This document shows, in pieces, positions 4,126 through 41,900 of a stretch of 44,003 bases of DNA. The notes under the pieces are model-generated. The model saw only the letters and a program-made list of their open reading frames with translations. It was not told where the DNA came from and made no database searches. Position numbers and translations under genes: made by a program. Source of the DNA: Hyphochytrium catenoides (Eukaryota > Protista > Hyphochytriomycota); assembly GCA_900088475.1 (NCBI GenBank), contig FLMG01003175.1:1-44003 (forward strand), written 5' to 3'. Numbering within the stretch: position 1 is the first letter of the stretch; each line of letters opens with the position of its first letter.

Positions 4126-6354
4126 AAGAGAGAGGGGACGAGAGTCAGGCAGGGAGAGACAATGAAGGACGACTAAGATACAGAGGACTCCAGAGGAAAG
4201 CAGGCGGACAGAACATCAGATCAAGAGCGCCAGTGGCAGAAGGGGATACCTTTAAAGAACCATTGCCTATTTCTTCTCCACTCTTGAAGAGAGAGAGAGA
4301 AGGGGGGGAGAGAGAGAGGGAGGGAGAGAGAGAGAGAGAGAGAGACAGAGAGAGAGAGAGAGGGCACAAAGATGCCACTGTCGTCCACACTCTCCTCGTT
4401 GCTTCTCCAGTTTTTCAACCACGAGTGCGGAACTTTAACAGTCGTCCTTCTCCCTTTGCATTCTCTACTCTCCTTCCCTCCGATCTCATCCTTCCAGGGC
4501 AGCTGCGGATGTCACCCCGAGAGTTAATGGGCTTCTGTTCTCTTCTTCTTCGTTGGGCGCAGGCGGAGTATGGAACGAGCTCTGCAACGGAGCTGCTGAA
4601 AGGAATTATGGAGACGAACTTTGATGAGTTCCAAGGGCTAGAGAGCCGTCCCTTTGTGTTCACCATCAAGGATGTCTCCTCTCTCCAGGGAGTGACAGAA
4701 AGTGAACCTTTTGAGGCAGGAGGATTCACGTGGAAGCTGCAGTTCCGTCGGAGAGAGAGAGACGACGACAAGAACTATAAGTTCCATCTGATCCCTTATG
4801 AGTGGAACGATCACTATCGAAAGGACTGGCAATGTTACGTGGCCTGCAGGACAGAGATTGTGAACCAGAGTGATGAGGCGAAGAATGTGACTGCGCACTT
4901 CTCCAAGACCTTCTCTCGCTATAACTTTCACGGGAGGTACAACAGACATATGTAGCTGTCTCCTGAGCCCTCTCCTGCTCTCTCTCTCTCTCTCTCTGTT
5001 TAACTCTCTCTCTCTCTCTCTCTCTGTTTGACTCTCTCTCTCCCTGTCTCTCTCTCTATTTCTCCCTTTCTTTCTGTCTGTCTGTTTGTCTTTCTCTCTC
5101 TGTCTCTTTTTCTCTCTCTCTCGTCCTTTCTTTCTTTCTTTCTTGTCCTCTCTCTTCTTTCATTGGAAGCAGCAGGAGGTCATTGCAAGTGACAAGCTCT
5201 CTGTTTGCCCTCTCTCTCTCTCATCACTCAAAACTCTGTGTATGTCCCTCGCTGTCTCTTTCTCTCTCTCTCTCTGCTCCCCTCTCACACTCCCTCTTTC
5301 TGCTCTCTACTGTTTATGGCCTTTCTCTCTTACATCCTGCACTCTCACTCTTAGATTCCCCTTCGGCTACTCTCGATTCGCCTCCACTACCAAGATCGAA
5401 GGCCCACTTGGTTTCCTCACTGCAGAAGGAGATTTGGTGCTGCGCGTGCAGATCAAGGCTAATGCGCTGTTTGGCATGGCCTCGACCTACCTTGTCACTG
5501 CCTTCCAGGACGTTGTGCAGGTGCTGGAGACAAAGGAAGGGAAGGGCACAGCGAGAGCAGAGGATAGAGAGCTAGAAAGAAAGAAAGAAAGAAAGACAGA
5601 GCGAGAGAGAGAGAGAGAGAACTGGAAAAGCTATGGGGTAATGACGGAGGCACTATGGACAAGAGGGGCACCTGAGATGGCTCTATCTTCTTACGTTCTC
5701 TCTTCTCTTTCTCTCTATTGCTCGGACGTTCTTTCCTAGACTTCAGAGCTTCTGGAACTTCCTCGCACAGTTCTTAAGCGTGTTGTCAGCTCTGACTATC
5801 TGAACGTGGAACGAGAGACGCTGGTGCTGGACGCGGTGCTGAGGTGGATAGACGCCAACAGCAACTGCACAGAAGAGCAGACAGAGAACCTTTTGGAGCA
5901 GGTACAGGAAGGGGAAGGACTTGCAACGCTGGCCATAGAGACGGAGCCTGCGTGTCTCTGGCCAAACTTTTCCTTTCTTCTCTGTGGCTTTTGCTCCATG
6001 CCTCTCTCTTTCTCTCTTGCTGTCAAGTCTCTCTTTCTCTTTCTGCGTTCACTTAGTCTCGTGCTAACCGTGGCCTAATCTCTCACCACCGTTGTCTCTC
6101 ACTCAGATCCGCTGGTCGCACATTCCAATCCCTGAGCTACTGGACACAGTGAAGTGTGTTCCTCTCCTGCAGCGGTCCGCTACCTTCAGAGAGATGCTCA
6201 ACTGGATCCTGCACGGCCGATCCCTGCACAGGCCGCGTTACGCTTACCCTGCCCGTCCTCCTACAGACAGGATTAGCTCCGTCGTCGACTGGCTGCTCAA
6301 GGGTCCAGCAGAGAGTGCAGGGGAGGCTACTGGCGGCAATACAGCTGCCATTGC

Positions 6355-17275: not shown

Positions 17276-17689
<414 letters not shown>

Positions 17690-20587: not shown

Positions 20588-21922
20588 ATGATCCCAGTAA
20601 TAGCGAGGCTGCAGGAGCTTCCTACATGGAGGCTGTACTGTGGCCTTATCATTCTCTTTTTGAGTGGCCTTCTAGGAACATTTTCCAAGNNNNNNNNNNN
20701 NNNNNNNNNNNNNNNNNNNNNNNNNNNNNNNNNNNNNNNNNNNNNNNNNNNNNNNNNCAAGGAGTACTTCTTCATCTTCGTTTTGAAGGTTTTTGCCAGC
20801 ATTACCCTTGTGTGGTGCGTCAATGGCATCTTCGTCGTCATCAGACTCCATGTCGAGCGAAGGAAGACCATGCGGGACCTTCGTACCGGCAAGATCACAG
20901 AGTTCTCGGAGCTCTTGATTATCCGGGAAGGGCTTGCAATCGGAAAGACGGTGATAAACGTGATTATATTGACTTCTCTGATCCTGGGAGACGTGATATC
21001 TTACGTTTACAGCTCTGTGCTGACCTTTATCGCTGCATTTATCACATGGATTGTCCTCGGTGGCTACACGTTTGTTAAGAACTATTGGGGAGGTCTCTTT
21101 GTTATAGGGGAACACTACTTCGACAACCGGCCTTACGTGATAATGAAAGGTGAATTAGAGGGCATTGAAGGGATCTGCGAGCAAGTAGATCTCCGCTTTT
21201 CTCGCGTCATAAGCCCCGACAAGACTATCACGTACATCCCTAACGGTCTCCTCCTCGAGAACCCGATTATTATGCACTCTCTCGCCCCCAAAAAGCTCAT
21301 TCGCTTGACTCTCAACCTCCACAGGAAGACAAGGACGGCGAGAATCCGCCTCCTGCTGCGCATGTTGGACCAGCTAGTGGTCCAGCAGTTATTGGCGTCT
21401 AAGACCTTGAAGGAGACAACCCGCGCCGTAGACTTCATGTCAAGGTTTACAGCCAACCGTCTCCTGCTCAAAGCTCCACCTGTAGATGTGCATCACCAAC
21501 ACACATCTGGCCGAAGTTCTCCTCGAAGAAGTCCGCTCGGTTCTCCTCAGCCTCTGCATCAGAGAGTTGGACGCTCTTCTCCTCGTAGATCCTCTGGTCG
21601 TGCCTATGATGTACGATACGATCCTCATGGCTCCTCCTATAAGCAGCTGCCTTATCCTGACGAGCAACCTGAGAACCAGAGCGTCTCTTCAATGACGGGA
21701 GCGACCTTACCAAACGCTCTAGCAACACCAGAGGAGGGGTTATCTGCGCGTTGGCCATCGTTCGTGGTACTAGAAGGCGCATACCGAGTGGTCCTGCAGT
21801 GCTATCTGTCTGTGGTGGATGAGTCCGTTTTCCTTAGACAGAAGACCGATATCGTCTTATCCGTCAATGAGCTGATCAAAGGTCTGGGGATTAAGGTTGT
21901 GACAAGCAGTAAAAGTGGCTGA
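20588..21922 (+). CDS. MscS-family (small-conductance mechanosensitive) ion channel-like membrane protein
   Basis: Several hydrophobic helices, then VKNYWGGLFVIGEHYF...IEGICEQVDLRFSRVISPDKTITYIPNGLLLENPI (MscS TM3b/beta-domain pattern NxxxGxxxxxxxxF...GxVxxIxLRxTxIxxxDxxxxxIPN). The C-terminal domain reads RVVLQCYL...FLRQKTDIVLSVNELIKGLGI. The N-terminus and the frame across the gap at 20690-20757 are uncertain. Confidence 0.8.
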   Translation: MIPVIARLQELPTWRLYCGLIILFLSGLLGTFSKXXXXXXXXXXXXXXXXXXXXXXXKEYFFIFVLKVFASITLVWCVNGIFVVIRLHVERRKTMRDLRTGKITEFSELLIIREGLAIGKTVINVIILTSLILGDVISYVYSSVLTFIAAFITWIVLGGYTFVKNYWGGLFVIGEHYFDNRPYVIMKGELEGIEGICEQVDLRFSRVISPDKTITYIPNGLLLENPIIMHSLAPKKLIRLTLNLHRKTRTARIRLLLRMLDQLVVQQLLASKTLKETTRAVDFMSRFTANRLLLKAPPVDVHHQHTSGRSSPRRSPLGSPQPLHQRVGRSSPRRSSGRAYDVRYDPHGSSYKQLPYPDEQPENQSVSSMTGATLPNALATPEEGLSARWPSFVVLEGAYRVVLQCYLSVVDESVFLRQKTDIVLSVNELIKGLGIKVVTSSKSG

Positions 21923-22800: not shown

Positions 22801-24612
22801 TCACGCCTGCAATAGCTCTACTGAGCACCACTTCTCGAACTCATCCAAACTAATCTTACCATCGGCGTTGGTGTCGGCCTCTCTAAAGCACTGCTCAGCA
22901 GTGATGCGCGCCAGCTCAGGTGGGTCCACGCCCATCTTCGCCCTAACATCAGGCGAAGTCTCATACATAACTTTGAAGATTGAGCTCAGATAGTTCACCA
23001 TCTCTGCTCTAGAGATGTATCCATCTCGATCTGTGTCGTACAGAGCGAAGGCAGCTTTCACCTTGTCTTCCATTCTGCTTCCACAAAGGACGGAGAGGCC
23101 GCTAGCCAGCTCATTGAAGTCGACCAAGTCGTTGTGATCCTCGTCAAAGAGAATAAAAAGACGGTTGATGATGTCTTCACTCTTTTTCTTGTCTTCCTCA
23201 CTGTCGTGACCTCCTCCTAGCTCTATAATTTTGTCAAGGCAAGCCACGAAGTCCTTTTTCCCTATGACTTTGTCAGGAACCGCTTCCTCAAATATCTCTA
23301 TGACATCATCTACTTCAAAGAGGTCAAGCTTCGTAATGCGTCGCGCCTCTTCTAGGTTCTCAAGGGCCGTTATAGACACCTCACTCGCATTAGAATCTCC
23401 TGCAAATGATGGAGATCGAGAGAGACGGCCCAGAGTTAGAAGGTATGCGAAGAGGCTGAAAGGCGCGCAATGCAGAACTAAAGCTTCCAACGCTGCTGAT
23501 CAAAGAGACGCGGCAAGCGCTAAGAGCGAGACCAGGCGAGTCATTTGGACAAAGAAGAGTACGTGGCAGAGCGGTCTCGACGAGGGAACGATGATGGTCA
23601 ACATTTCATGAAGAAGCGAACAAGAATAGAAAGGAACCACCCACTTGGTTTCACACCAAGACTGAGAGAGAGGAGAAAGCCGCCTTAGGAGTACGAGCCT
23701 TACTTTGTGGTCCTAGCCTGTCTCCAGCTGCCCTCAAAGCGTGCTCTGCGGTGGTCTCCACATCGATGCCAGCTTTCGAGTACCAGCGCTGGAACTCTTC
23801 AAAGCTGAGCCTCCCATCACCGTCCAGATCCGCCTCTGCGAAGCATTGCTCGGCCGTGATGGCTGCAAGCTCTTGCGGAGAGACTCCAATCTTTTGAGAA
23901 GTACCAGCTGTCGTCTCGTAGAGCAAGCGGAAAACAGAGGAGAGGTAACGGGTCATTTCTTCCAAAGATATGTACCCATCTCCGTTAATATCATAGAGAG
24001 AGAAAGCAGCTTGCACTTTCTCGTCTCTACTTCCGCCACAAATAACTGACAAGCCGCTAGCCAGCTCAGAAAAATCCACGCCACCACTCTTGTCCGTGTC
24101 AAAGATTCTGAAAAGCAAGCTGACCGCAAGGGATAGACGCTTCTTGTCCGAATCAATGCCAGCTAGCTCTGCCAGCTGAGAGAATGCCAGTCTAAAGGCA
24201 GCTGGAGAAAGAATTCCTTGCTGATCGGCCGCTCTGGCGAAGATCTCAAAAACTTCTTCCGCGTTGCACTTCCCCAGCCCAGTTAGGGCCTTTATCTCCG
24301 TCAAGGAAAACCAGCTGGGCACCCCTCTCTCTTCGACCTCCGGCAGCACAAGAGAGGAATCTGCATTGAGATACCAGCACTGAAACTCTTCAAAGGAGAG
24401 CTTCCCATCGTGGTTAAGATCTGCCTGCTCAAACGCCTCCTCTGCCGTCGCAATGCCCAGCTCTTCAGGAGAGACCTTGATCCTGATGGACTCCGGGGAG
24501 ACTTGATAAAGTACCTGAAGCAGTTGGGAACGAATGGAGAAAGCTTAGACACGGGTTGACTGCGTGGGAAGCACCAAGAAAGAAAGAGAGTGAGATTAAG
24601 AGAGAGGTAGAA

Positions 24613-24647
<35 letters not shown>

Positions 24648-27600
24648 GAGAGAGCGAGAGAGAGAGCGAGAGAGCGAGAAAGAAAGAGAGAGACAAACAG
24701 ACCAGGACAATTAGTAAGATAACTGTGAGTACCTTGAAGACCGAGATAAGATATCTCGTCATCTCCTCGAGGGAGATAAATCCGTCGCCATTGAGATCAT
24801 AGAGAGAAAAGGCCGCCTGCACCTTGTCCTCCTTTCTGCCTCCACACAGGACCGAGATCCCACTCGCTAGCTCGCTAAAGTCCACCATGCCGTTCCTTTC
24901 CGTGTCAAAGATTCTGAAAAGCCTGTCAATGACGAAAGATAGTCTCTCTCTGTCCACGGACGACAAGCTTCTTCCGCGGAGAATCTTTTGAAAGCACTGC
25001 AGGAAGCTGCTGCGGTCTAACAGACCGTCATCATTAGCCGCTAGAGCAAATATCTCAAAGATATCTTCAGCGGGGAATCTGTGCAGGTTTGTCAGCCTTC
25101 TAACTTCCTTCAGACTCATCCAGGAAGGGACTGAATTGTCCACCATCTGCTCTAATGACTGGCTGCTGGGGCTTAAATACCTGAGGCGGAGAGCATATGA
25201 ATGACTCAATATAGAAGACTAGGGCCGGCGTAGGCTTCACAGGCAGATCGATAGCGCATAGAGGGATATGAAAAGAGATCCGAGAGAAAGAGAGGAGAGA
25301 CAGCGAGCGAGAGAGAGAGAGAGAGAAAGGGAGAGAGCAGCGAATGCGATTGAGGGAATAGGTTGCGCCTTTCAGAATGTGAATGCCGCATAACGACTAA
25401 AGCTGCTAGCTCGGCTAACAGCGCTTCCTCTATCGCTTGTGTTCCCCCCACGCCGCACCCTTTTTAAACTCCTCGTTGCCCCTCTCTTGTTCTTTCCATA
25501 GCTCACCAGTGCTTGAACTCATCAAAGGAGAGCTTGCCATCGCTGTCACTATCAGCCTCTAAGAACGCCTGGCGCGCAGTCAGTTCCCCAAGCTCTGCTG
25601 GAGTCAGCGTCATGCGCTTGCTAATCTCCTCTGACACTTCGCCTAGGACCTTAAAGACTGAGGTCAGGTACCTATGAGACAGAAAAGAAAGCGTTAAGCC
25701 ACTTCTGAGGACCGAAGAAAGGTACGCAGACGAGAAGCCCACGATCGTGCTCCCTCTTTTACCCTCAACCTCGTCACCTTCAGTCTCACCCCAATAGACC
25801 TTCACTTTATCTAGCATTCTCTCTTCCAGAACCTTTTCTGAGTATCTCTCTAGGCTCAACTCGTTCATTTTGCTCACCTGGTCATCTCTTCCATAGATAT
25901 GTAACCATCTCCATTATAATCGTAAAGGGAGAACGCGGACTTCACTTTATCATCGCGGCTGCCTCCACAGAGGGCGGCCAGTCCACTGACAACGTCCTTG
26001 AAATCAACAACTCCTCTTTCCTCTGTGTCAAAGATATGGAAGATGCGCTTTACAATCCCTGCTGTCTTCTCCTGTCTTCCTTCTTCATCCATATTTCCTA
26101 TCTCCTCTGCTCTGTTTTCCGAGGTTTGTCTGCTATGGGATGGCTGCTTGCGCTTAAGTAGAGCATCAAAAGAATCTTGGAACGCTTGCTGGGTCAGCAG
26201 ACCATTTCGATCTACTCACGAGGGCAGCACACCGCACAATGAGATGTGAGAAGCAGTGGAAGAGAAGAGAGGATCAATGTGTGTGAGGGAGGGAGAGAGA
26301 GAGAAACAGAGAGAGAGCGAAAGAGAAGAAAAGGGGAGACAGATTGAGAGACAAGGAGAGAGAAAAAGAGAAAGAAGGAGGGAACAGAGGAAAAGGGAAG
26401 AGAAGGAAAAAGTTTATAAAAAGGAAGCTAATAAGACCGTCTGAAGAGCTAAGCTCACAGAGAAGAGAACAAACGAGGCTTAGGCAGCGCTGATGTTCAC
26501 TGAGTAGCCGAACAAATGGGCGCTATAATCTTCAACCTACCAGCGTTCTTTGCGAAGACTTCAAAGACGTCACTCGGTGCCAGAGTCTGCAGATTGAACG
26601 CTCTTCTTGCTTCCTTTAGATTGGTCCATCGCGGCAGAAGCTCCAGCGCTGGCTTCTTTTTTCGCGCTCTGTTTAGACTCCGCTCTTCTTTCGCGGCGTG
26701 CTCTTGTGCCCTCTGCCATTCCTGTTCTCTCCAATCTTTCTCTTGATAGGGGGCTACGTACCACTTCTTGAACTCCTCTAGAGAGAGAAGGCCGTCATGA
26801 TTAAGGTCTGCAGCTGCAAAGGCCTCTTCTGCAGTGATGGCAGCCAACTCATAGGGAGAGACTCCACCAAGCCTCTCTTTCGTGCCAGGAGCCACCTCAT
26901 AGAGTACCTGCGAGAGAGATGCAATTGGCCGTAAGCCGCTGACAAAGGAGCATCTCTCGGCCTTGTTGTACTTTCTTGCAGCCTGTCACTTGTACTTGAG
27001 CTCTTCTCGCTTAGCAGAGCGTAAGGCTTATCCCTCTCTTACCCCTTCTCTCTCTCGTTCTGTCTCTCTCGCTCATACACGGCTGCAGTGTCGACATAAT
27101 GCAGCTTCTGCACTGAGCAGAAGACATCGCAGAAGACATCGCGTCCTCACCCTTTCTCTTTTCCTCTGTACCATTCTCGCTCCAAACCCTCTCTTATATC
27201 TTGAGCCACCTTACCAAAACACCTTCACATGGCCAACTCATTTCTCTATCTTCGACCATTTATCCTTCCGCTTCTAATTACCTTGAAGACCGATGCCAAA
27301 TACCGCGTCATCTCTTCAAGAGATATGTACCCGTCCCCGTCATAGTCATATAACGCAAAGGCCGCAGCTACTTTATCCTCTCTACTCCCTCCGCAGAGGA
27401 TAGAAAGGCCGCTAGCCAGCTCTGAGAAGTCCACCACTCCGTTCTTATCCCTGTCAAAGACCGAAAACAGACGGCGAACCACGATGGAAGCCCTCTCTTC
27501 ATCTTCATTCTCTCCGAGTCTCTGGCCCATGAGCTCTGAGAAGCAGTCTCTGAAGACCTCCCATGACAAAACTCCCTCATCGTCAGCTTTCTTGGCAAAC

Positions 27601-30600
27601 ACTTCAAAGACATCTTCGGCATCAAAGTTCTGCAGGTTTGTTAGGCGGCGCACTTCCTGCAGGCTCATCCATTCAGGTGGCGGTTCTGCTGTGTGACCCT
27701 AAGGATACAGCCATCAAGTCAGATAAGAACAGGCGGCTGGGAGCGAGCAAGAAAGTGAGAGGAAACGTGAGCGCCAAAAGTGTAAGTGGCATTGTTGAAG
27801 CTTGCAAGCTGTCACAGGGAACGGCCAAATCATCTCCTCTGATTAGGTGACATCGTTACCTGGCGTCCTTCAGGACTAGCCTGTATGTACCAAAGCTGAA
27901 ACTCATCAAATGACAGACGGCCGTCTCTGTCTGTGTCTGCCTCTTTAAAGGCTTGCAGAGCAGTCAAGTCCCCCAGAACCTCCGCACTGATGCTCAGCTG
28001 TGAGGACACAAAGGGAGCAACTTCGTATAGCACCTTGAAGACGCTCCTCAGATATCTAGGCACAAGGAGGATGCAGTACAGGAGTAGAAAGGAAGGTGAG
28101 AGGGCAATAGTGAGCGCACAAAGGTCGCAGAAGCATCTAGTAGCTCCATGCTCCTACCTCTTCATCTCCTCCAAGGATATGAAGCCGTCTCCATCATAGT
28201 CATAGAGAGAGAAAGCCGCCTCCACCTTGCTGTCTCTGCTGCCTTCACAGAGCACTGACAGTCCGCTCACAAGCTCTGTGAAGTCTACCAGCCCATTTTC
28301 CAAAGGATCAAATATTGCAAACAGTCGATCGACGATCGCCTTCGCCTGCAGGCGTTCCTCCTATGGACACAGAGTTATCACCGGGCAAGATGGTTAAAGA
28401 AAAAGCATAACAAGCTGCTACAGCCTAGTCCTCGTCTCTGTAGTCATGACAGAGACTGACCACGGCCATGTTTCGCTACTCGGTGTGTCGCTGTGGTTTG
28501 CAGTCCTCTCCACTTACCTCTGTAAAGCCTAGATACTTGTCTCCGATGAGGATCCTAAAGCATTTATTGAACAGCGGCCGGGTCAACATGCCTTCCTCTG
28601 TGGCGTGCTCCGCAAAGATCTCAAATACTTCGTCAGGCGTGTAGCTTTCTAAGTTGGTCACATGCCGAGCCTGACGGACATCCCGGGGCAGAGACCCTGC
28701 CGTCCAGTTGCAAATGTCAGCAGAGTTGAATTTGTGAGTAAGGGAAATTGCATTGGCACTGCGAGTGTCACGAAGGAGCTAAGCGTACGACAGGGCGATG
28801 GAAGAAAGACATCTCTAGGTCACAAAATCGAATCAAAACGAGGGGCCAGAAGGTAGAACGAGTCTCACCAGCTTCAGTGATGCCTCTAGCTTCCCCAGAG
28901 CTGTACCAAAGAGTGAACTCCTCATAGTTCAGCCGCCCATCCCGATCCAAGTCAACCTCCTGGAACGCTTGCTGGGCAGTGGACTCACCCAGCTTCTGGG
29001 CGCTAACGCCCAATCTCCGCTGCAGCCCAGGCGTGACCTCAAATAGAACGAGGAACACAGAGGAGAGGTAGGTGGACATCTCCTCAATTGAAATAAAGCC
29101 GTCCCCATCGAGGTCATAGAGGGAAAAAGCAGCTTTGACCTTGTCCTGCCTAGTCCCTCCGCAGAGGACAGATAGGCCACTAGCTACCTGAGCAAAGTCA
29201 ACAACTCCTTCTCCTCTCGCATCAAAAAGGTCAAAGAAGCGTTCTAACAATAGCCTTGCCCGACTCAATCGAGCCGTCTGCCCACCAGTGCCGACTTTGG
29301 TTTGGATTAGGAGATCATTGACGGCTCTGCGGTAGGCAGAAAGCGTAAGAGCACCATTGTTATCTGCAGCTTCAGCAATCTTTTCAAACACATCCTCCAC
29401 GTTGAGCTCGCCCAACCCTGTTTGCCGTTTAATCTCCTCGAGACCTGAGATCCATCACAACGGATAGAATAAGAGACATAAGCCGCTGTCTGTCATGGGC
29501 TTAACGAGTCGAGGATCACCCAGACGAGAGAGAATGAAGAAGGACAACGAGCCACCCACCAGAGCGAAGAGTTCAGAGGGCAGAACTGGCGCTGTGGGAG
29601 AGAAAAGTAGGTTCGCAGGCTAACAGACGCAAAGGAAATTGAAAGTACGAAGCCGATTTCACTTCCTCAACCACCTACCAGCGCTTGAAATGTTTAGCAG
29701 TGAGCGGTCAGTTTCCTCCTCTTCTTCATCTTCCACTGCCTCTATTCCTCCTCGGGCGTACCATCGCCGGAACTCCTCAAAAGAGAGTCTCCCATCATGG
29801 TCCAGGTCAGCCTCCAAGAATGCCTGCTCAGCGGTCACACGAGCCAGCTCCTCAGGACGAACGCCCATACGCTCATGAGTGCCAGGATTCGTCTGATAAA
29901 GCACCTATGCAACAGTATTAGCAGAGCTGCCCATACGCACGTTATGGAAAATAGACGGGTTTTCCATTGAGTAAGAGGAGAGCAGGGACAATCCCTCTCA
30001 ACGGCAGCCATTCCTGAGTCTTTATGCTGATAAGGCTCACCTTAAACACAGAGGTAAGGTATAAGATCATCTCCTCTAGCGAGATGTACCCATCTCCATC
30101 TTCGTCATAGAGAGAAAAGGCGGCTTTCACCTTCTCATCCCTGGTGCCGGCACAGAGGACAGTCAATCCGCTGGCGAGCTCGCTGAAGTCCACTTTGCCG
30201 TTTCCGTCAACGTCAAATAAGTCGAAGAGGCGGCCAACGACAACCTGTAGCATCAGACAGAGGGTGCCCATCCGCGAAAGAACGATGAGTTAGATCCAGG
30301 AGAGAGTCCATTGACAGTACTGCATAAGGACTAGAAATAACCCTAGCATCACGTTAGGAGTCAAAAGCCCAAACAGCGAGAAGACCTCATGTATATGGTG
30401 AGTATGTCAGGAGAAATCCAAGCTGAATGAGAGAATGACTCTCACCTTTGCTCTTGCCATATCTGTCACCCAGGTGCCTATAAGGTCCTCAAAGCAGTCA
30501 AAGAACTCCTCTTTGGAGATCGCTCCGTCTTCTTCATCTGCAGCCGCAGCGAACATCGCCAGGACCTCTTCTACGGGATAGGACTCCAAATTTGTCAGAC

Positions 30601-33600
30601 GCTTGATCTGTAACGACAGAGTAAGACAGGTCAAAAAGTCAGGGATCTGTTATGCTGGATGAAACGACACAAGGAGATAGAAGGTGACAACCCGCACAGA
30701 GGCAAGGCCGGGCAACAATTAGAAGGTCCTTCCAGAGCTGTACGGGAGAGAACTTGTCTGCTCTGAGAGCGAAAGAGACCGCTGACATTAAAGACAAACG
30801 AAGAAGCAAAGACAGGCGGAATAAACTAAGACCAGCGAAGCGCAGGAAAGATTTTACAGGGGAATAAACAGTCAGAGACTATTACCTCTCTGAGAGTGTT
30901 GTCCTCTACAATCTGCTGTGGAGGTTGCGCATACCAAGCCTTGAACTCTTCAAAGGAAAGTTTGCCGTCCTTATTAAGATCTGCTTCAGCAAAGCACTGC
31001 TCCGCAGTGATAGTGGCAAGCACCTCGGGACTGACTTCCATAGATTGCGCAGTATCTGGAGAAGCCTCAAAAAGAACCTGATACGACCAGACAAGGAGCA
31101 CGAGAGTTCGTGATACGTAAGATAGAGGAGCGAAAGTAGACAAGTTATCGAAGTAAGATAAGTAAGCAGGACGTCATCAATCGTGGTGCTCTCACCTTAT
31201 AGACTGACGTCAGATAGTTGACCATCTCCCCTCTGTCTATGTATCCATCTCCATCATAATCATACAGCTCAAACGCAGAGCGAACCTTATCATCTCTACT
31301 GCCTCCACAGAGGATGGAGAGGCCACTGCCTAACTCTTGAACGTCGATCAGGTTGTTCTTGTCTTCATCGAAGAGGGAAAAGAGACGGTCGAGCACTTGA
31401 CGTGTCCGTTGCTAATGAGGAAAGAGGTTGATACGGAAACTTAGTCACTAGAAGGCAGCATTACTAGGTCAAAGAGAGAGAGTAGCAGGAGCATGTAAAA
31501 TAATTCCTCTTCGTGACTGGAGGGACAGGAGCAGCCCCTTGAGGAGAACTACAGGATAACCGCATTCGCAGCTAGGGCTAAAGGCAAGGGGTAGGGCTTG
31601 TCTGAGCCCTCCAAGGCACAGACAAGGTTTATCTAGTTGAAATTATTCTACATAGAGGTCAGGAGCGAGCAACGGTAGAGAGCATGTGGGTCGACCCACA
31701 AAGATCTACCTGCTCGCCAGGAGCTAGCTTGCCTCCCAACGCCTTCTGTATGAGCTTGTTGAAGCATCGATAAAACACTTGCCGACTAATATTCCCATTC
31801 GCATCCGCTGACGACGCAAAGAACTTGAACACATCCTGTCATATTGGTATTGAAGGAAGGAGAGAAGAAGAAGTTTGTGGATATGAGTAGGAGGAAGATC
31901 AACAAATAGAGCGGAGGTTTGGTGGAGAAGGATTGCACCAGCCGACTCAGGAAGAGGAGACAGTTGAGTACGCACCTTCACGTCATAGGACTGGAGGTTG
32001 GTCACCCTGCGAATCTCTTGCAAGCTGTTGGAGAGACTGGAAACACGCGTTTCAGGAATCCCTACCTGGACACCATCTTCTGGCTCTTCGGCGCGCCCTT
32101 CCTCATCCTTTAAGAGAGACTGCGCTGACGTCTTGTACCATCGCTGAAACTCTTCCAATGATATCCGCCCATCTCTGTCTGTATCAGCCTCCAAGAAGGC
32201 CTGTTGCGCGGTAATCCCGCCCAGGGTGACAGGGTCCACCTGCAGATCGGCTAGCGTTTCTTCATCCCCAGAGAGAAAAGGAAGAGAGAGAGATGAAGTA
32301 GCAGAGGGCGAGGTCTGATAGAGCACTCTAAAGACAGAGGTGAAGTACGTCGCCAGCTCGTCTAAGGATATATAGCCGTCGTCGTTAACATCAAAGAGAG
32401 AGAATGCTGCCTGTAGACATGCGAGAGGACAAACAACGATTAGATGGAGCCTTCATAGACAGGGTTATAAGGTATTTGACGTAAGACAGAAGCGCTAAGA
32501 TCCATTCTTTCTCCCATGGCCTCTTCCTCTCCTTAGGGCCGTACTTGGCCGTTCTGCGTACCTTGATCTTCTCCTCCGGAGTACCTGCACACAGGACAGA
32601 GAGTCCACAAGCAAGCTCCGTAAAGTCAAGGGCTGAGTTGTTGTCCGTGTCAAATATTTTGAACAGCTCGTCCAATATGAACTGAGCTCGTTCAGGTTCC
32701 ACACCGCCGTAGGGGAGCGCGGAAGACCGCATCAGACCAAGAAATGAGCCCATAAAGGCTTCACGGGTAAGAAGACCTGAAGATGACAGGAGACAATTGG
32801 GAAGGAAAGAGGAGACACCAAACAGAGCGGTAAGAGATCCAATGGGTTAGAAGGGCGGGGGCATTTTCTCGTGAATGATGCGTAGATAAGGGACAGACCA
32901 GCTCTACCCATAAGAGAAGACAGGGAGGAAAGCACTATGAGGGAAAACTGAGGAAGGTCTTCCACCTTCTTCGTTCGCACTTTCGGCAAAGTGCTCAAAA
33001 ACGTCCTCGACAGTATAGGCAGTGAGGTTCGTCACTCTCTGTACTTCTTCGCGCGTGATTCTGGAGTCCTCCAGCAGGGAGAAAGACCGACGAAAGCGGG
33101 TATCCGAGGAAGGAGAAGGAAGAGGAGCTTTGACTGTCTTCCCCTCTATATTCTCCTCCCGGGTTTCTGCAGGTCTGCGTTTGGAATACCACCGCTTGAA
33201 CTCTGCAAAGGATAATCTACCGTCGTGATTGAGATCTGCCTGAACAAAGGCTTGCTCGGCGGTGATGATGCCCAGCTCTTCGGGGCTGATCCCTAAAGTC
33301 TGTTGGGCTGTGGGGGAGGCCTCAAACAAGACACGGAAGACGCTTGTAAGGTAGGCCTAAAGGAGGAAAAAAGGAAGGGTGATTTGTCAGAGGAGCAAAG
33401 TTGAGCTCCAACAGAGAGAGAAGGGCAGGCATGCTGCAGAGTTGCAAACTGCCATGAGACGGAAAACAGACAGGCCCAACAGGCAAAAATGACACGTTTC
33501 AAAGCGTGGTCGCTGCCCTAGAGTGTGCTATATCCATCTAAACTCACCGTCATCTCGTCCAGCGTCATGAAACCATCCCCATTCTGATCATATAGCTGGA

Positions 33601-36142
33601 ATATAGCACTAACTTTATCATCGGAAGAGCCTCCGCATAGGACTGAGAGGCCACTAGCTAGCTCACCAAGGCTGACTCGACCGTTCCGGTTTTCATCAAA
33701 TGCGAGAAAGAGTCGGTCAATGAGAGCACGGACTTCCTTAGCGGTTCTTGAGGAAGGTAATTTCTGAGCACCGTATTGCTGAGCAGCTATGATACTCTCA
33801 AAGCACCTGCACAAGGCCGAAACAAAAGTGAGCCCGGCGTACGGAAGAGCGAGAGATGTAGAGGCATAGATATAGGCAGACAATGAAGAGGTTAAAAGAT
33901 GGATGCGCAGAGCGCTAAGAAGCTAGTTCAGATCGTTGAGAGTGAAGCGGTGACGTCCATAGGCCATCCAAAGTCTTTAAGCCTCCAACAGAAGCCTCAT
34001 TATAAAGTCCTCCGTCACATTATAGCCCACCTCCTGAAGGCTTCTTGGTCCAGCTCCCCGTCTCTAGCAGCAGCGCCAAAGAACTTTACCAATTGCTGGA
34101 CAGAAATGCTGCCCAGCCCAGTCATTCTTCTTAATTTGTCAACGCTCTGAGTGACAGTTCCTGAGCTTAAAAGCGAACTCCCAGTCACTTCTACGTCCAC
34201 TTCTCTTCTTTTAACGCTTTCTCTACTGGTAGTGCCAGAGTACCAGGAGCGGAACTCCTCAAAGGAAAGCTTGCCGTCGCGATTCAGATCCGCCTCTAAG
34301 AAGCACTGCTGGGCAGTGATGCGTCCCAGCTCCTGGGGAGAGACTTCGTGAAGTTTAAAGATATCTGGTGAAGTCTCAGAAATGACCGCGAAGACGGAGG
34401 TAAGATAGCGGGTCATCTCTTCAAGAGAGATAAACCCATCCCCTGGACGCACGATGAGGAAGAGAGGATGGATAAGTGAGTGTGTCCGTCAACAGAGATA
34501 GATCGAGAAGTAGCCCGACAAGGGTCATTCGTGCCCTACTTTCTCTCCAAACCTCCCCGCCTGCCGTGTTTCTCAAGTCGGACCGCTAGACTCTTTGCCT
34601 GAGTTCATATCCTTCTCTCAAACTACTTCCAGGCCGACACCTACAATCTCCGCCAGGCCGCTTATACTTCCCGCCCCGTGCTCTCACCATTTGTGTCATA
34701 TAGGTCAAAGGCAGCCCTTATTTTTTGGTCTCTTTCACCTCCCACCAGCACCGACAGTCCGCTAAGGAATTCCGTGGCGTCCACAACCCCGTTCCTGTCC
34801 CGGTCAAAAATATCGAAGAGCCGGTTGAGAACGGCACGGGTGCGACGATCAGCGGCCCCTCCCAAGAGCTGTGCGAAGCACTTCTGAAAGGTGATGCGGT
34901 CTATGACACCAGTGGGAGCGGCCTTTCTGAAGATCTCAATGAGGTGAGATACTTCATACCTAGTGAGGCCCAACCACCGGCGAGGAGAGATAGAAAGAGA
35001 TGCAGAGAGAGAAGACACCGATGAGAAGAGCAGCAATAGGGGGAACAGTATGGCGACATTTGCAGAGAGGATGAAAAAATGTGCGACGCGCTTAGAAGTT
35101 AAGAGAACGACAGGCAAGGGCAAAACAGTATTGCACAGACGTCCGAAGAGACCTTGCTCTAAAGCTGCTCGGAAGAAGGAAAGGAAGAAAATGGTAGAGA
35201 CGAACACGACCGTGCCATGGGCAGGGATATTGACAGTGCGTAATGTGAGAGAATGGAAAGAAAGAGCGAGACAAGAGGGACCGAAAATGTGCTGACACAG
35301 AGGATCGAGAGCATGGGACGTTACAGGTGATACCAACTGCATAGAAGAAACGGTAAACAAGCCGGAACGATATAGCTCAGCTCCTTACTTGTTGAGGTCA
35401 AAGATCATGGAGAGGCTGCCTTTCCGCCCACCATTTCGCCTTCTCCCTTTCTCCTCTCGGCTCGTCTCTCTTCCATTTTCGCTTTCAGGTGGTTGTCCTT
35501 CCAAAAGCAATGTGAACGAGGCAGCACTTTCCTCTCGGCCCGAAAAGAAAGCAGGAGCGCGGGCCAAGAGAGAGAGAGGGAAATGGACTTCTTGTTTCGC
35601 ATCCTGCGGGGGAACGGCCAGAGGCGTTGTGAGCTGCTGATGTCCGCTTACATAGGACTAGAAGGAAAGGCACTGCTGCCGATATGAAGAGGCTTTCGCT
35701 AGGATGAATGACGACGATGAATGTAACACGTGATGGATTGGACAACGAGGAAATAGAGAGCAATAGAGAAGGTAGAAACAAACCCTAGACCTTCTTCCAC
35801 AAAGAAAGAATGCGCTACAGGAGCAAACTTTCATGGCGCACTTCGAACAGCAGAGAGCAGATAGACAAAGAGATAGGTCGAGGAGGTCGATCGCTAATGG
35901 AACAGAAGGTAGAGCGAGGGGGAAAGGAGAATGAGAAGCATGTCGATTGCCATGAGAGGAACCTTGAGGCCAACGATATCTTTCTGTGTCCCAAACGCAG
36001 CCTGGAGTGTCTGCTTGAGGTCCGCTAGAGGGAGCCCAGGAAAGACAACGATGCGCTTCACCGTTCCGTTTAGAGCGATGGAAGCGGTGAAGCAGCCCGG
36101 AGAGCGGTTCTCGGCCCGCTTAGGAGCTGAGCCCACCGCCAT
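22801..36142 (-). CDS. Giant multi-EF-hand protein: N-terminal ~130-aa region plus 12 tandem NCS/frequenin- or calcineurin-B-like four-EF-hand modules; 25 coding exons, 2599 aa
   Basis: Exons (minus): 36142-35963, 35603-35389, 34959-34688, 34442-34031, 33806-33548, 33356-32966, 32776-32562, 32410-31976, 31835-31710, 31411-31196, 31077-30886, 30607-30446, 30244-30041, 29904-29679, 29444-28869, 28696-28518, 28360-28158, 28055-27860, 27698-27282, 26907-26541, 26211-25878, 25671-25507, 25180-24733, 24514-23704, 23399-22801. Sum 7800 nt; every intron is GT-AG with matching phase. Repeat consensus: RRLTNL..Y...DVFE.FA..A...G.L....F..CF...RLF..FD.D.NG.VDF.ELASGLSVLCGG.R..KV.AAF.LYD.DGDGYIS.EEM..YL.SVFKVLYE..P.....GVSPEEL...TA.QAF.EADL..DG.LSFEEF..WY. 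Confidence 0.9.
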
Positions 36143-36167
36143 TCTGAGCCTTAGACTTCTGATGCTA

Positions 36168-36203
<36 letters not shown>

Positions 36204-38958: not shown

Positions 38959-41900
38959 CTAGAGTAGCACCGCGTTCTCCGTCTTTTGTCGTCTCCCGAT
39001 TTCTCCTCTCTTCTCCCTCAGCACCTCTTCCTCGGGACTCCTCTCTCGCATGGCCTGTAAGTGGTCTAAACTCTTCCCTGAGGTCTCGTATGGGAGAAGC
39101 ATGGCTGCAAGGCCTATAAGAATATTAACTATGGCGTACGTCAGGATGACGAAAGAAAGTGACAGAGATTCATTGTCACAAAAGAAAGGTGTGATTCCTG
39201 CTCCTATCCGCGCCACGGCGTTCGCGAACCCATGCCCGGTTGCCCTGATGTGAGTGGGATAGATCTCCGGGGTAGCTACCCACGTGGCGCACGAGGCACC
39301 CATGATAGCCGCTCGGGCTATTCCCGCCGAAAGAGTCAGGACGGAAGGAGAGAAAGAGCGCCCGAACGAAAGAGGGACCATGAAGATCCCTGCGCCCACA
39401 TACATGATGCACTGAGACCACTTTCTTCCCCACTGGTATAAGTGAAGAGTGCACGAAAAGGAAAAAAGAGAGTTAGTTAACTTCCTCGTCAATTACATAT
39501 AAGATGAGCAAGGCGAAGAGGGAGATAAAAAGACAAAAGGGCGCTGCTCTTACTCACTCGGTCAATGACAAGCATGGCTACCACCACTCCTGCAGCCTCG
39601 CACAGCGTAGAGACGAACATTGCGGAGTAGTTAAAGGTGTCAGACGAGCCTTCTGAGCCTTTCTCCTCTTCTGAAGAGCCAAAAATTCGGGGCATGGACA
39701 GGACCAGACCGTAGTATGTGAACCTGGGATCAAGTGGAACAAGTCAGTGCAGATTGGCAAGGCCGTGTCTCGATATGTTGAACAATGTGGAAAAGAGACT
39801 TGGCAGATTCTCTGTTTGGTAGCAGGAAAGGGGAGTGGAGGTATCAGAACATTGGCAGTGGAGTTGCCCGTATGTCCAAGAAAGCCATAGTGTGAAGGCG
39901 AAGCTGGAGAGCTTAGGAAGCGCGCAAAGAGGCAGATATGAAAGCAATGGGATGGAGATTGAGGGTTAGAACGCCTGACAATCAAAGACCTAAACCGAGT
40001 ATTGAAGTTTATGAGGGCCAAGGGCCATACCCGTATCCACACCACAGCGCCCATAGCACCAGACTAGTTCGCAAAAATGGTCGTGAAAAGAGCTCCCGAT
40101 AGCTTCCTTCGGGCTCCACCGCATAACTGAGCTCCAAACCTTCAGGAAGAGAACTCTTGTTCTGCAGTGTTCAACAGACCATTGGATAAGATATTTGAGC
40201 GAGAGGAAGGAGGCAAGACCCACTATCAGCATGATAGGACACAAAAATTGGGGCAGACCTAAAAAAAAGGAAAATGGAGGTTCCTATCATACGGTTAGGA
40301 CTAGGGGGCAAAGCTCACCATATGGGCAATCTTGTGCATCAGTTGCACTGTCTCCTCCTTTTTGCCTTTAGCCATGAGCCATCTTGGGGACTCAGGCTGA
40401 AACAGAAGAAAACCGTAGGTTAGAGACGCTNNNNNNNNNNNNNNNNNNNNNNNNNNNNNNNNNNNNNNNNNNNNNNNNNNNNAGCCTCTTACCAAGAGAG
40501 GAAACATAGCCGCAGCAAGGACGAGAGGGAGGGAGGCTAGCAAGGCCATCACCCTCCATCCCACACTTTCCACCACTAGCCAGGCCACTACTGCGACGTA
40601 GACACTGCCGAAGGTCCAAAAGAAATTAGTAGCCATAAGCTTTGACCCTCGGGCAGACGGAGGAAGAGTTTCTGCCAGGAGATCAAACGGGATCACAAGG
40701 CCTAGAATAGAATAGTCGTACACGGAGAGGCAGTGAAAAGCGTGAGATAACGAGGGAAAGGAAAAACGAAGAGGAGGGAAGGCACTCGAAATAAAAGCTC
40801 AGCACTTGCAGGGACGAACAGAGACGAGGAAGCTCTTCCAAGACGTGAAGGGCACAGGTTAAACAGCCAATATCCGTCCGCGGTATTTCCTCCGCGTAGA
40901 CAAGTCCATCGAAAGGGAAAAGGTCAGGAGAAAGAGCCAGAAGACATCCTTTGATTGAGACAAAGGCAGTATGGGCAGGTGGTGAAAGGCAATAAGCTAG
41001 AGAGAGAGGCAGAGAAAACAACTTGAGCTCTTATCCCTAGTTCAGACGGACCTGCTACTCCAAACCCCACGCAAGCTCGACAAAGGAGTAGAAAGTGGTA
41101 AGAGGGAGAGAAGGCAGAGATGATCCCGCAGACCGCAACCATCAGAGTGGAATAGAGATAGCCCTTCCGCCGTCCATAGCGATCAGCTACAGGGCCCCAG
41201 AACAGGGCGCCAAAGAGCTCTCCCTGGAGGATAACAAACGTCCGAATGGTAAGAGATACAGGTTAATGCAAGACCCTCCCTTAGATCAGAAAGGGATACA
41301 CAAGGATAGAAGTGGACAGGCAGCAGAGGACAGCGCGAGTTTATGGCAATGAATAGCAGGAAAGACTGCTAGCGAGAGTAGACTGGACGCGACATAAATC
41401 AACAGAAAGGCTGTACGCCATACGGAGAGTCAGGAGGAGATGACCAGAAGATGAAGCAAAGGAGATGAAACTCATGGGTACCGCAAAGACTATGGCAGTT
41501 AGCGCTGCCTGCCCTGAGCTAGAGAGGTCCCATTCCTTCTTGACTAGGACCTGACATTGATGTGTCCATGAGCAGAAATGTTAGGACACTTTAGGAGACA
41601 GCGGACGGATAAGGAAGAGTCAGAAAGTACGACGAACAAAGGGAACATGCAAGACGAAAGCCTCCTGTCCTGGAGGGAAAGCCAAGAGCTGTGACGATTT
41701 GAAAAGAAGAGAGTGGCCGAAGAGAAAGAATAAGCATGCTCCACCTGGAGAAAGGAAAGGATCATCACTTCGACCGCATCCTGAAGAGAGAAACAGAGAG
41801 GGTAAGCCATAAGAGAGGATAAGATAGGGTGAGACTCAGCATTCTCAACGGGATGGAGCCAAGGTGTAGGGAGACACGACACAAGAGGCAGAGAGTGCTT

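What the first reader, a model, noticed from the sequence alone, without database searches (positions are those of the whole stretch)
22801..36142. A 2599-aa polyprotein-like calcium sensor made of 12 tandem NCS/CBL-type modules
Seen: more than 20 short EF-hand ORF fragments join, through 24 canonical phase-matched introns and with no in-frame stop, into one protein with 12 copies of a ~190-220-aa unit. That gives 48 EF-hand positions. Established: each unit has the layout of neuronal calcium sensor/frequenin/recoverin and calcineurin-B-like proteins, with a non-binding EF1 (module 1 AAPTGVIDRITF resembles NCS CPSGxLxxxxF), EF2 followed by LSxxxxGxxxxKxxxAFxLYD, and a long EF3-EF4 linker. These proteins normally occur as single ~190-aa, often myristoylated, domains. 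Here there is no MG myristoylation start and no catalytic domain. Inference: a beads-on-a-string Ca2+ sensor or scaffold, a high-capacity Ca2+ buffer, or a Ca2+-driven conformational/contractile filament. Similar unannotated repeats may exist in related protists; I cannot establish novelty without a search.
Basis: partly seen in the sequence, partly recalled or inferred. Interest (0 to 1): 0.9.

Follow-up and report, generated by a model that had tools for sequence, protein, structure and literature searches.

The report
Giant 12-module calcium sensor gene
This minus-strand gene encodes a 290-kDa protein with a small ubiquitin-like head and twelve recoverin/NCS-type calcium-sensor units in a row; it belongs to an uncharacterised family already in the databases for oomycetes and dinoflagellates.

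Summary
On the minus strand, 25 exons joined by 24 GT-AG introns give one stop-free CDS of 7800 nt.

The protein has 12 tandem modules of about 185 aa. Each matches whole NCS proteins (hippocalcin, HPCAL1, neurocalcin; E about 1e-29). EF1 is degenerate in 12/12 modules, EF2 is canonical in 8/12, and EF3 and EF4 are canonical in 12/12, giving 32 canonical Ca2+ loops.

The architecture is not new. Collinear orthologues of 2200-3000 aa with 10-13 modules exist in all the oomycete genera returned, in dinoflagellates and in other stramenopiles. They are annotated only as "hypothetical", "EF-hand" or "Recoverin family protein". One paper calls PITG_04603 "exceptional" but gives no function.

A module tree shows strict position-by-position orthology within lineages. 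This argues against a cleaved polyprotein or a plain buffer and for an ordered multivalent Ca2+-switch scaffold.

No RNA data could be listed for this genome. The single-transcript claim therefore rests on exon-bridged module junctions, a 2206-aa uninterrupted ORF in Phytophthora infestans and a complete MMETSP transcript.

Function remains unknown. The scan also noted this stretch in another window (s1-371221).

The parts
22801..36142 (-). Whole gene (CDS start to stop). 25 exons: 36142-35963, 35603-35389, 34959-34688, 34442-34031, 33806-33548, 33356-32966, 32776-32562, 32410-31976, 31835-31710, 31411-31196, 31077-30886, 30607-30446, 30244-30041, 29904-29679, 29444-28869, 28696-28518, 28360-28158, 28055-27860, 27698-27282, 26907-26541, 26211-25878, 25671-25507, 25180-24733, 24514-23704, 23399-22801.
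   Evidence: Splice-site enumeration with frame and stop constraints. Final CDS is 7800 nt = 2599 aa with one terminal stop. All introns are GT-AG. Indels in DNA runs fall only in introns.
35499..36094 (-). N-terminal ubiquitin-like (beta-grasp) domain, aa about 17-95, split by intron 1 (35962-35604). It is followed by a charged low-complexity linker.
   Evidence: tblastn of orthologue N-termini hits both exons. An orthologue-only HMM hits aa 23-82 without a gap, E 1.9e-15. AF2 of orthologue P0178:1-80 gives pLDDT 92.7 with a bb-a-bb-a-b topology. Foldseek top hits are NBR1 PB1, NEDD8, ubiquitin, SUMO and UFM1, TM 0.6-0.7, E >= 3e-3. There is no Pfam family.
34228..35429 (-). Module 1 (aa 119-294). 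EF2, EF3 and EF4 are canonical; EF1 is AAPTGVIDRIT.
   Evidence: HMM 250 bits; loops. It forms a clade with module 1 of oomycetes and of the 13-module group, support 100/98.
33174..34158 (-). Module 2 (aa 318-507)
   Evidence: HMM 258 bits. EF2-4 canonical. The junction with module 1 lies inside one exon (34442-34031).
32123..33068 (-). Module 3 (aa 543-744), with a 15-aa insertion in the EF3-EF4 connector
   Evidence: HMM 255 bits; alignment.
30919..32038 (-). Module 4 (aa 773-960)
   Evidence: HMM 285 bits. Sister to oomycete module 4, support 99/86.
29746..30909 (-). Module 5 (aa 964-1146)
   Evidence: HMM 272 bits.
28891..29691 (-). Module 6 (aa 1165-1353); EF2 degenerate (DARGEGVVDFAQ)
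   Evidence: HMM 255 bits; loops.
27875..28691 (-). Module 7 (aa 1363-1548); EF2 degenerate at position 3
   Evidence: HMM 270 bits; loops.
26746..27677 (-). Module 8 (aa 1561-1746)
   Evidence: HMM 283 bits.
25165..26634 (-). Module 9 (aa 1784-1986); long EF1-EF2 insert; EF2 degenerate
   Evidence: HMM 268 bits; alignment and loops.
24359..25128 (-). Module 10 (aa 1999-2182)
   Evidence: HMM 280 bits.
23768..24319 (-). Module 11 (aa 2196-2379), entirely within exon 24514-23704
   Evidence: HMM 269 bits. AF2 pLDDT 91.9, pTM 0.85. Whole-module structural match to apo S. pombe Ncs1 (2L2E), Z 13.4 over 175 aa.
22813..23370 (-). Module 12 (aa 2411-2596). The protein ends 3 aa after it.
   Evidence: HMM 266 bits. 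Sister to the last module of oomycetes, support 95/95.

Best explanation
The locus is one gene for a soluble, acidic 2599-aa protein. It has an N-terminal ubiquitin-like domain, a charged linker, and twelve tandem NCS/recoverin-type four-EF-hand modules that run to the C-terminus. It is the orthologue, in a genome whose modules branch next to oomycetes, of an uncharacterised family typified by Phytophthora infestans PITG_04603.

Shown:
- The architecture.
- The NCS homology of each module.
- 32 canonical Ca2+ loops (EF1 dead in all 12 modules).
- Conservation of the array, and of individual module positions, across species.

Inferred mechanism: each module acts as an NCS-type Ca2+ switch that changes from a closed (apo) to an open state on Ca2+ binding at EF2-EF4. 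Because each position is separately conserved, the chain most likely works as an ordered, multivalent Ca2+-dependent scaffold. It would bind up to a dozen partner sites, or partner copies, in a defined order. The ubiquitin-like head would serve as an anchoring or self-association domain. On this reading it is neither a store of interchangeable sensors nor a simple buffer.
For: Gene model and 2599-aa frame.

One polypeptide:
- 8 of 11 module junctions are encoded inside single exons.
- The P. infestans orthologue locus carries one uninterrupted 2206-aa ORF.
- MMETSP transcript P0178 is a complete 2758-aa ORF with 13 modules.

NCS homology:
- The module profile matches HPCAL1, hippocalcin and neurocalcin over residues 13-170 of 193, E 6e-30 to 5e-29.
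- The AF2 model (pLDDT 91.9) superposes as a whole on Ca2+-free Ncs1 (Z 13.4, 175 aa) and on apo recoverin. Ca2+-bound NCS structures match only its C-lobe.
- EF-loop census.

Family:
- Collinear 2100-2600-aa alignments at 32-40% identity.
- Orthologues in oomycetes, dinoflagellates and other stramenopiles.
- All of them end right after the last module.

Position-specific conservation:
- Every module i of Pythium pairs with module i of Phytophthora.
- Every module i of P0178, P0001 and Durusdinium forms its own clade.
- Window modules 1, 4 and 12 are sister to oomycete modules 1, 4 and 11.
- The module-1 clade spans all lineages, support 100/98.

Other:
- N-terminal domain.
- Soluble and acidic, with no TM-like segment.
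- PITG_04603 mRNA is roughly constitutive and orthologues occur in azoosporic oomycetes, so it is not a flagellar protein (PMC5322657).
- Purifying selection on the predicted exons.
Against: - No transcript or protein evidence for this organism.
- No partner, localisation or phenotype is known for any family member.
- The scaffold mechanism is inferred only from NCS biology and from conservation patterns.
- Nine of the window's twelve modules are unresolved in the tree, so position-specific orthology with other lineages is shown only for modules 1, 4 and 12.
- The N-terminal fold was predicted for an orthologue, not for the window's own sequence, and its Foldseek E-values are weak (>= 3e-3).
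- The AF2 closed conformation may be a modelling preference rather than a state assignment.
Confidence: 0.6

Rival explanations
1. High-capacity cytosolic Ca2+ buffer or store. The array simply multiplies Ca2+ sites (32 or more per chain) and has no specific targets.
For: - 32 canonical loops.
- pI 4.63 with 453 acidic residues.
- Roughly constitutive expression of PITG_04603.
- No catalytic or known interaction domain apart from the small N-terminal domain.
Against: - A buffer needs neither fixed module order nor position-specific conservation, yet each module position is an independent conserved lineage.
- The whole NCS layout, including the dead EF1 and the pre-EF1 helix used by NCS proteins for target and groove interactions, is kept in all modules.
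- A conserved N-terminal domain is retained.
Confidence: 0.15
2. Ca2+-driven mechanical element. Concerted closed-to-open transitions in 10-13 serial modules change the length or stiffness of a filament or tether, possibly polymerised through the PB1/ubiquitin-like head.
For: - Serial modules with short linkers of 3-37 aa.
- The top structural hit of the N-terminal domain is the filament-forming NBR1 PB1 domain, though weakly.
- The modelled module resembles the closed apo NCS state, which implies a large Ca2+-dependent rearrangement.
Against: - There is no evidence for polymerisation.
- PB1 acidic/basic signature motifs were not examined.
- Linker lengths are variable and unconserved.
- The family occurs in organisms with no reported Ca2+-contractile structure of this kind (own knowledge, not tested).
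Confidence: 0.1
3. Polyprotein precursor that is cleaved into about 12 free NCS-like sensors (as polyubiquitin is).
For: The tandem head-to-tail units of similar size and the ubiquitin-like first domain recall polyubiquitin fusions.
Against: - Modules are only 38-61% identical to each other.
- Linkers have no shared motif.
- Each position is separately conserved.
- Module counts are fixed within lineages: 11 in oomycetes, 13 in the P0178/P0001/Durusdinium group.
- No protease domain or conserved cleavage site was seen.
Confidence: 0.05
4. Several adjacent short EF-hand genes (or a mis-joined model) rather than one gene.
For: - No RNA evidence is available here.
- The window's own full-length protein did not appear among database predictions, so an existing annotation may be fragmented or absent.
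Against: - 8 of 11 inter-module junctions lie within single exons without a stop.
- All 24 introns are GT-AG and phase-compatible.
- Orthologues are single ORFs or transcripts.
- The N- and C-terminal modules and the N-terminal domain match the ends of the orthologues.
Confidence: 0.05

Closest known systems
Unnamed family of giant tandem NCS-repeat proteins of stramenopiles and dinoflagellates. Examples: Phytophthora infestans PITG_04603, Saprolegnia parasitica SPRG_10981, Plasmopara halstedii CEG41765, Durusdinium trenchii CAK9094657 ("Recoverin family protein").
   Same: - N-terminal ubiquitin-like domain.
- 10-13 tandem NCS-type modules.
- The protein ends directly after the last module.
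- Collinear alignments over more than 2000 aa at 32-40% identity.
- Orthologous first, fourth and last modules.

   Different: - 12 modules here, against 11 in oomycetes and 13 in the dinoflagellate/MMETSP group.
- The gene here is broken by 24 introns, whereas the P. infestans gene is nearly intron-free.
- No member has a known function; the literature calls PITG_04603 only an "exceptional" 10-EF-hand protein (PMC5322657).
Neuronal calcium sensor / recoverin family (NCS-1/frequenin, hippocalcin, HPCAL1, neurocalcin, recoverin, KChIPs, GCAPs)
   Same: - Each module aligns with the whole NCS domain (residues 13-170 of 193, E about 1e-29).
- Four EF-hands with EF1 non-canonical.
- The LSV...G....K...AF.LYD segment after EF2.
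- A long EF3-EF4 connector.
- The predicted fold superposes on apo Ncs1 and recoverin.

   Different: - NCS proteins are single-domain proteins of about 190 aa, usually N-myristoylated (own knowledge).
- Here 12 domains are fused, there is no MG start, and the Cys-Pro of the EF1 CPxG signature is not kept.
- A family-specific L.E.RRLTNL start motif and a W-Y end motif are present.
Calcineurin B and plant CBL (SOS3-like) proteins
   Same: Four-EF-hand domains of similar size, with significant sequence matches (E 1e-14 to 1e-21 for single modules).
   Different: - The matches cover only EF2-EF4 (profile positions 65-180).
- Calcineurin B binds four Ca2+ (own knowledge), whereas EF1 is dead here.
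- The EF1 loops here are 11-13 residues, not the 14-residue CBL loop.
- No phosphatase or CIPK-type partner is indicated.
Dystrophin/dystrobrevin EF-hand region (structural look-alike only)
   Same: It is the best whole-module structural superposition of the AF2 model (1EG3, 9C3C; Z about 15, 191-192 aligned residues).
   Different: Sequence identity is only 10%, and dystrophin EF-hands do not bind Ca2+ (own knowledge). The match probably reflects the shared closed four-EF-hand packing, not kinship.

Membership tests
NCS/recoverin family (per module) | About 190-aa domain with four EF-hand motifs that is homologous over its whole length to NCS proteins | tested here: met
   The profile of 46 modules matches HPCAL1, hippocalcin and neurocalcin at E 6.5e-30 to 5e-29 over chain residues 13-170. 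The 12 modules score 250-285 bits.
NCS/recoverin family (per module) | EF1 unable to bind Ca2+ (classically through a Cys-Pro substitution, CPxG) | tested here: inconclusive
   EF1 is degenerate in 12/12 modules (position 1 is not Asp, position 12 is not Glu/Asp, or the loop has the wrong length). The Cys-Pro signature itself is absent; only module 1 (AAPTG) resembles it.
NCS/recoverin family (per module) | Canonical Ca2+ loops at EF2, EF3 and EF4 (some members lose one) | tested here: met
   EF2 8/12, EF3 12/12 and EF4 12/12 are canonical by the D-x-[DNS]-x-[DNSG]-x-x-[hydrophobic]-x-x-x-[ED] rule. Ca2+ binding was not measured.
NCS/recoverin family (per module) | N-terminal myristoylation consensus (MGxxxS) | tested here: not met
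   The protein starts MAVGSAP, and internal modules have no free N-terminus.
NCS/recoverin family (per module) | Compact two-lobe globular fold | tested here: met
   This rests on a prediction only. The AF2 model of module 11 (pLDDT 91.9) aligns with apo Ncs1 2L2E (Z 13.4, 175 aa, rmsd 3.3) and with apo recoverin 1IKU (Z 10). Global TM to Ca2+-bound NCS-1 is low (0.35-0.41).
NCS/recoverin family (per module) | Stand-alone single-domain protein | tested here: not met
   Twelve domains sit in one 2599-aa chain.
Calcineurin B / CBL | Four functional EF-hands (calcineurin B) or a 14-residue EF1 loop (CBL), with full-length homology | tested here: not met
   EF1 is degenerate with loops of 11-13 residues. 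Calcineurin B matches cover only EF2-EF4.
PITG_04603-like giant tandem NCS-repeat proteins | 10-13 tandem modules collinear with family members, ending at the last module | tested here: met
   The window has 12 modules. BLASTP alignments of 2100-2600 aa are at 32-40% identity. Module maps of 14 members are.
PITG_04603-like giant tandem NCS-repeat proteins | Conserved N-terminal domain of about 75 aa with a beta-grasp fold | tested here: met
   An orthologue-only HMM hits aa 23-82, E 1.9e-15. The fold was predicted on orthologue P0178.
PITG_04603-like giant tandem NCS-repeat proteins | Positional orthology of modules | tested here: inconclusive
   Modules 1, 4 and 12 group with oomycete modules 1, 4 and 11 with support 93-100. 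The other nine window modules are unresolved.
Polyprotein (polyubiquitin-like precursor) | Near-identical repeats separated by conserved processing sites | tested here: not met
   Modules are 38-61% identical to each other, and linkers of 3-37 aa have no common motif. Each position is individually conserved. Processing itself is not testable here.

The most novel reading that the evidence does not exclude
The family is an ancient, SAR-wide "molecular ruler" for Ca2+ signalling. It would be a 10-13-station chain in which each NCS-type module recognises a different partner, or one site on a large partner. A Ca2+ rise would then assemble or release an ordered multi-protein complex, or change the length of a tether. 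The ubiquitin/PB1-like head would fix one end or polymerise the chains. Nothing like a fixed-order array of a dozen NCS sensors has been described functionally.
Probability: 0.2. Interest if true: 0.8.

Novelty: new member of a known kind. Interest (0 to 1): 0.55.

Why it matters
NCS-type sensors are textbook single-domain Ca2+ switches. Here a chain of twelve, with a ubiquitin-like head, has been kept with fixed module order within oomycetes and within a dinoflagellate-containing group, and the family is found in both stramenopiles and dinoflagellates. Even so, no member has a name, localisation, partner or phenotype.

The family is present in the returned oomycete genera, which include major plant and fish pathogens, and in coral-symbiont dinoflagellates. 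It is therefore a conserved, lineage-restricted component of Ca2+ signalling that could be studied directly in tractable Phytophthora or Saprolegnia systems.

For this genome, the result gives an exact 25-exon model and shows that the locus is an orthologue of that family rather than a one-off oddity.

Tried and rejected
**RNA and read evidence**
1. Two run searches listed no RNA run. Only DNA runs X1-X3 of one organism were listed, so splice junctions could not be verified by reads.

**Searches that returned nothing useful**
2. Looking for the window's own annotated protein. Three full-length searches with orthologues (P0006, P0008, P0001) and the representative search did not return it. The closest hits are about 40-46% identical. 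The organism's identity stayed coded, and I did not pursue it.
3. A solved multi-module relative. A PDB search with the 2221-aa orthologue found only single-domain NCS, calcineurin B and calaxin chains.
4. Pfam on the N-terminal domain gave no family, only a sub-threshold TUG-UBL1 hit at E 0.048.
5. Literature. Searches by locus tags, by "Recoverin family protein", and by combinations of tandem, NCS, protist and dinoflagellate terms gave only PMC5322657.
6. The ESM Atlas look-up added only generic EF-hand clusters.

**Readings considered and dropped**
7. My first 5' models were superseded. These were the direct exon 1 to module 1 joins at 35291, 35336 or 35090, and the exon 2 acceptors at 35657, 35636 or 35633. 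They added intron-like peptide or were broken by the 35622 deletion allele.
8. The flagellar/axonemal sensor idea (calaxin-like) was dropped. Orthologues occur in azoosporic oomycetes and PITG_04603 is constitutively expressed.
9. Best-hit mapping of inner modules between lineages was ambiguous. The tree resolved only modules 1, 4 and 12.


Full report
**1. What is in the sequence**

The region 22801-36142 contains more than 20 minus-strand ORF fragments rich in EF-hand motifs. Pfam finds only EF-hand families in them.

I anchored on conserved peptides and enumerated all GT-AG introns that keep the frame and avoid stops. This gave a 25-exon, 24-intron model.

The only ambiguous junction was the acceptor of intron 1.
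- DNA contigs of public runs carry an allele with a 1-nt deletion at 35622, plus clustered SNPs. This would break acceptors 35657, 35636 and 35633.
- The acceptor at 35603 (pyrimidine tract followed by CAG, phase 0) avoids that problem.
- With 35603 the CDS is 7800 nt and the protein is 2599 aa with a single terminal stop.
- An HMM built only from orthologue N-termini aligns to residues 23-82 without a gap across this junction (E 1.9e-15).

The protein is 290.5 kDa with pI 4.63 and has no TM-like segment. The ATG at 36142 is the first in frame after an upstream stop. The gene ends opposite a convergent MscS-like gene.

**2. Support for the exon structure without RNA**

No RNA run could be listed, so I laid DNA contigs from three runs on 30201-36200.
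- All 7 indels fall in predicted introns. Introns make up 47.5% of the stretch, so P is about 0.005.
- Listed SNPs are half as dense in exons (14 in 3119 bp) as in introns (26 in 2823 bp).
- Exon SNPs are 7 synonymous and 7 non-synonymous. The tool did not show 18 further SNPs.

Eight of the eleven module-to-module junctions are encoded inside single exons. Those modules are therefore joined in an open frame regardless of splicing.

**3. The modules**

An HMM of the repeat finds twelve copies (176-203 aa, 250-285 bits). They are 38-61% identical to each other (mean 47%) and are separated by unconserved linkers of 3-37 aa.

The loop census gives:

| EF-hand | Canonical loops |
|---|---|
| EF1 | 0/12 (degenerate in all) |
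| EF2 | 8/12 (degenerate in modules 6, 7, 9, 10) |
| EF3 | 12/12 |
| EF4 | 12/12 |

That is 32 canonical loops out of 48 positions.

Sequence comparison with solved structures:
- A single module hits calcineurin B, hippocalcin, NCS-1, KChIPs and calaxin (E 1e-21 to 1e-12).
- A 46-module profile matches HPCAL1, hippocalcin and neurocalcin at E 6.5e-30 to 5e-29 over residues 13-170 of 193. That covers the whole NCS domain including the pre-EF1 helix.
- Calcineurin B matches only EF2-EF4.

Structure prediction for module 11 (AF2, pLDDT 91.9, pTM 0.85):
- As a whole it superposes on Ca2+-free S. pombe Ncs1 (Z 13.4, 175 aa), on apo recoverin, and on the dystrophin EF region (Z about 15, 10% identity).
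- Ca2+-bound NCS-1 structures match only its C-lobe.
- Foldseek global TM to Ca2+-bound NCS-1 is 0.35-0.41.

The modules are therefore NCS-type, modelled in a closed state. They lack myristoylation and the Cys-Pro EF1 signature.

**4.

Exons 1 and 2 encode about 75 conserved residues (…NGxxKxIxVxPGxxLxxLxxTLxAAFG…IVGL…FPLSLLxxxPxxF…). Orthologues share this stretch.

AF2 of the orthologue P0178:1-80 gives a confident beta-grasp fold (pLDDT 92.7). Its best structural neighbours are NBR1 PB1, NEDD8, ubiquitin, SUMO and UFM1 (TM 0.6-0.7, E >= 3e-3). Pfam has no model for it.

A charged low-complexity linker follows the domain.

**5. Relatives**

An exhaustive HMMER search with one module found 10,974 hits. 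The top ones are 2200-3070-aa proteins with 11-14 matched stretches.

Named members come from:
- oomycete genera: Phytophthora, Pythium, Globisporangium, Lagenidium, Saprolegnia, Achlya, Aphanomyces, Albugo, Peronospora, Hyaloperonospora, Plasmopara, Peronosclerospora;
- dinoflagellates: Durusdinium, Symbiodinium;
- other stramenopiles: Chrysoparadoxa, Triparma;
- an MMETSP complete transcript;
- one record labelled Batrachochytrium salamandrivorans.

All are annotated only as "hypothetical", "EF-hand" or "Recoverin family protein".

My model aligns collinearly with them over 2100-2600 aa at 32-40% identity.

Module counts:

| Group | Modules |
|---|---|
| Oomycetes | 11 |
| This window | 12 |
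| P0009 | 12 |
| P0178 / P0001 / Durusdinium group | 13 |
| Record labelled B. salamandrivorans | 10 |

All members end at the last module. The P. infestans locus has an uninterrupted 2206-aa ORF.

The one paper found, PMC5322657, calls PITG_04603 exceptional with "10 EF-hands". It reports fairly constitutive expression and orthologues in both zoosporic and azoosporic oomycetes, and gives no function.

**6. Evolution of the array**

I built an ML tree of 73 modules.
- It pairs every Pythium module i with Phytophthora module i (all support 99-100).
- It groups every module i of P0178, P0001 and Durusdinium together.
- Window modules 1, 4 and 12 are sister to oomycete modules 1, 4 and 11.
- The module-1 clade spans all lineages (support 100/98).
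- The other nine window modules are unresolved.

Positions therefore evolve as separate, conserved lineages, and at least the first module predates the split between the lineages sampled. The placement agrees with an earlier scan note that the genome is probably stramenopile.

Four modules (4, 5, 8, 10) share a phase-0 intron after SVFK, and modules 7 and 9 share a phase-2 intron. In-frame module skipping, as proposed in scan note s1-371221, is geometrically possible but untested.

**7. Interpretation**

Shown: one gene model, a ubiquitin-like head plus 12 NCS-type modules, 32 canonical Ca2+ loops, and membership of a conserved but uncharacterised family.

Inferred: an ordered multivalent Ca2+-switch scaffold.

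Alternatives:
- The position-specific conservation and the fixed counts within lineages argue against a plain buffer and against a cleaved polyprotein.
- The exon-bridged junctions and the single-ORF orthologues argue against separate genes.
- A mechanical or tether role cannot be excluded.

**8. Verdict**

The locus is a new member of a catalogued but functionally unknown family.

Noticed in passing
window 35604-35657 (minus strand, end of intron 1): Just upstream of the preferred acceptor, the frame reads QLTTPLAVPPQ. tblastn aligns this to the TPIAL/TPVAV strand of oomycete N-terminal domains. Alternative acceptors at 35657, 35636 or 35633 would add 10-18 aa in frame. One allele carries a 1-nt deletion at 35622 that would break them. 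This may be a relic or an alternative 3' splice site.
   Followed up: partly
window 30201-36200: DNA contigs of runs X1-X3 differ from the window at about 1% of sites, with two haplotype-like patterns. They also show a 196-bp skip (35020 to 35217) inside intron 2. This fits allelic variation in a diploid or mixed sample.
   Followed up: partly
window 24585-24693, 25282-25337, 26293-26410, 36168-36203: (AG)n/(CT)n microsatellites and purine-rich 16-mers lie in introns 21-23 and just upstream of the start codon. They produce the SLSLSL/ERERER pseudo-ORFs seen on both strands.
   Followed up: no
window 17279-17689 (+): Intron-less histone H3 gene (136 aa; Pfam Histone, E 6e-49).
   Followed up: partly
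window 7279-11772 (-): A 1497-aa uninterrupted low-complexity ORF (Ala/Pro/Ser/Lys/Glu-rich) in the GC-richest part of the window (55-60% GC). It has no Pfam match and is interrupted by an N-run at 7352-7407.
   Followed up: partly
window 20588-21922 (+): MscS-type mechanosensitive channel exon (Pfam MS_channel_2nd, E 1.7e-6), convergent with the EF-hand gene. It contains an N-run at 20690-20757.
   Followed up: partly
window 38959-40723 (-) and 4233-4955 (+): Sugar/MFS transporter exons (Pfam Sugar_tr) upstream of the EF-hand gene, and a MATH-domain ORF near the left end of the window.
   Followed up: partly
P0017 (database protein, 1991 aa): A 10-module family member is labelled Batrachochytrium salamandrivorans (BASA81_012439). 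It is the only record with a fungal label. It could be contamination of that assembly or a genuine chytrid member.
   Followed up: no
PMC5322657: The same paper names a second "exceptional" oomycete protein, PITG_10150 (8 EF-hands), induced more than 100-fold in sporangia. I did not check whether it is related to this family.
   Followed up: no
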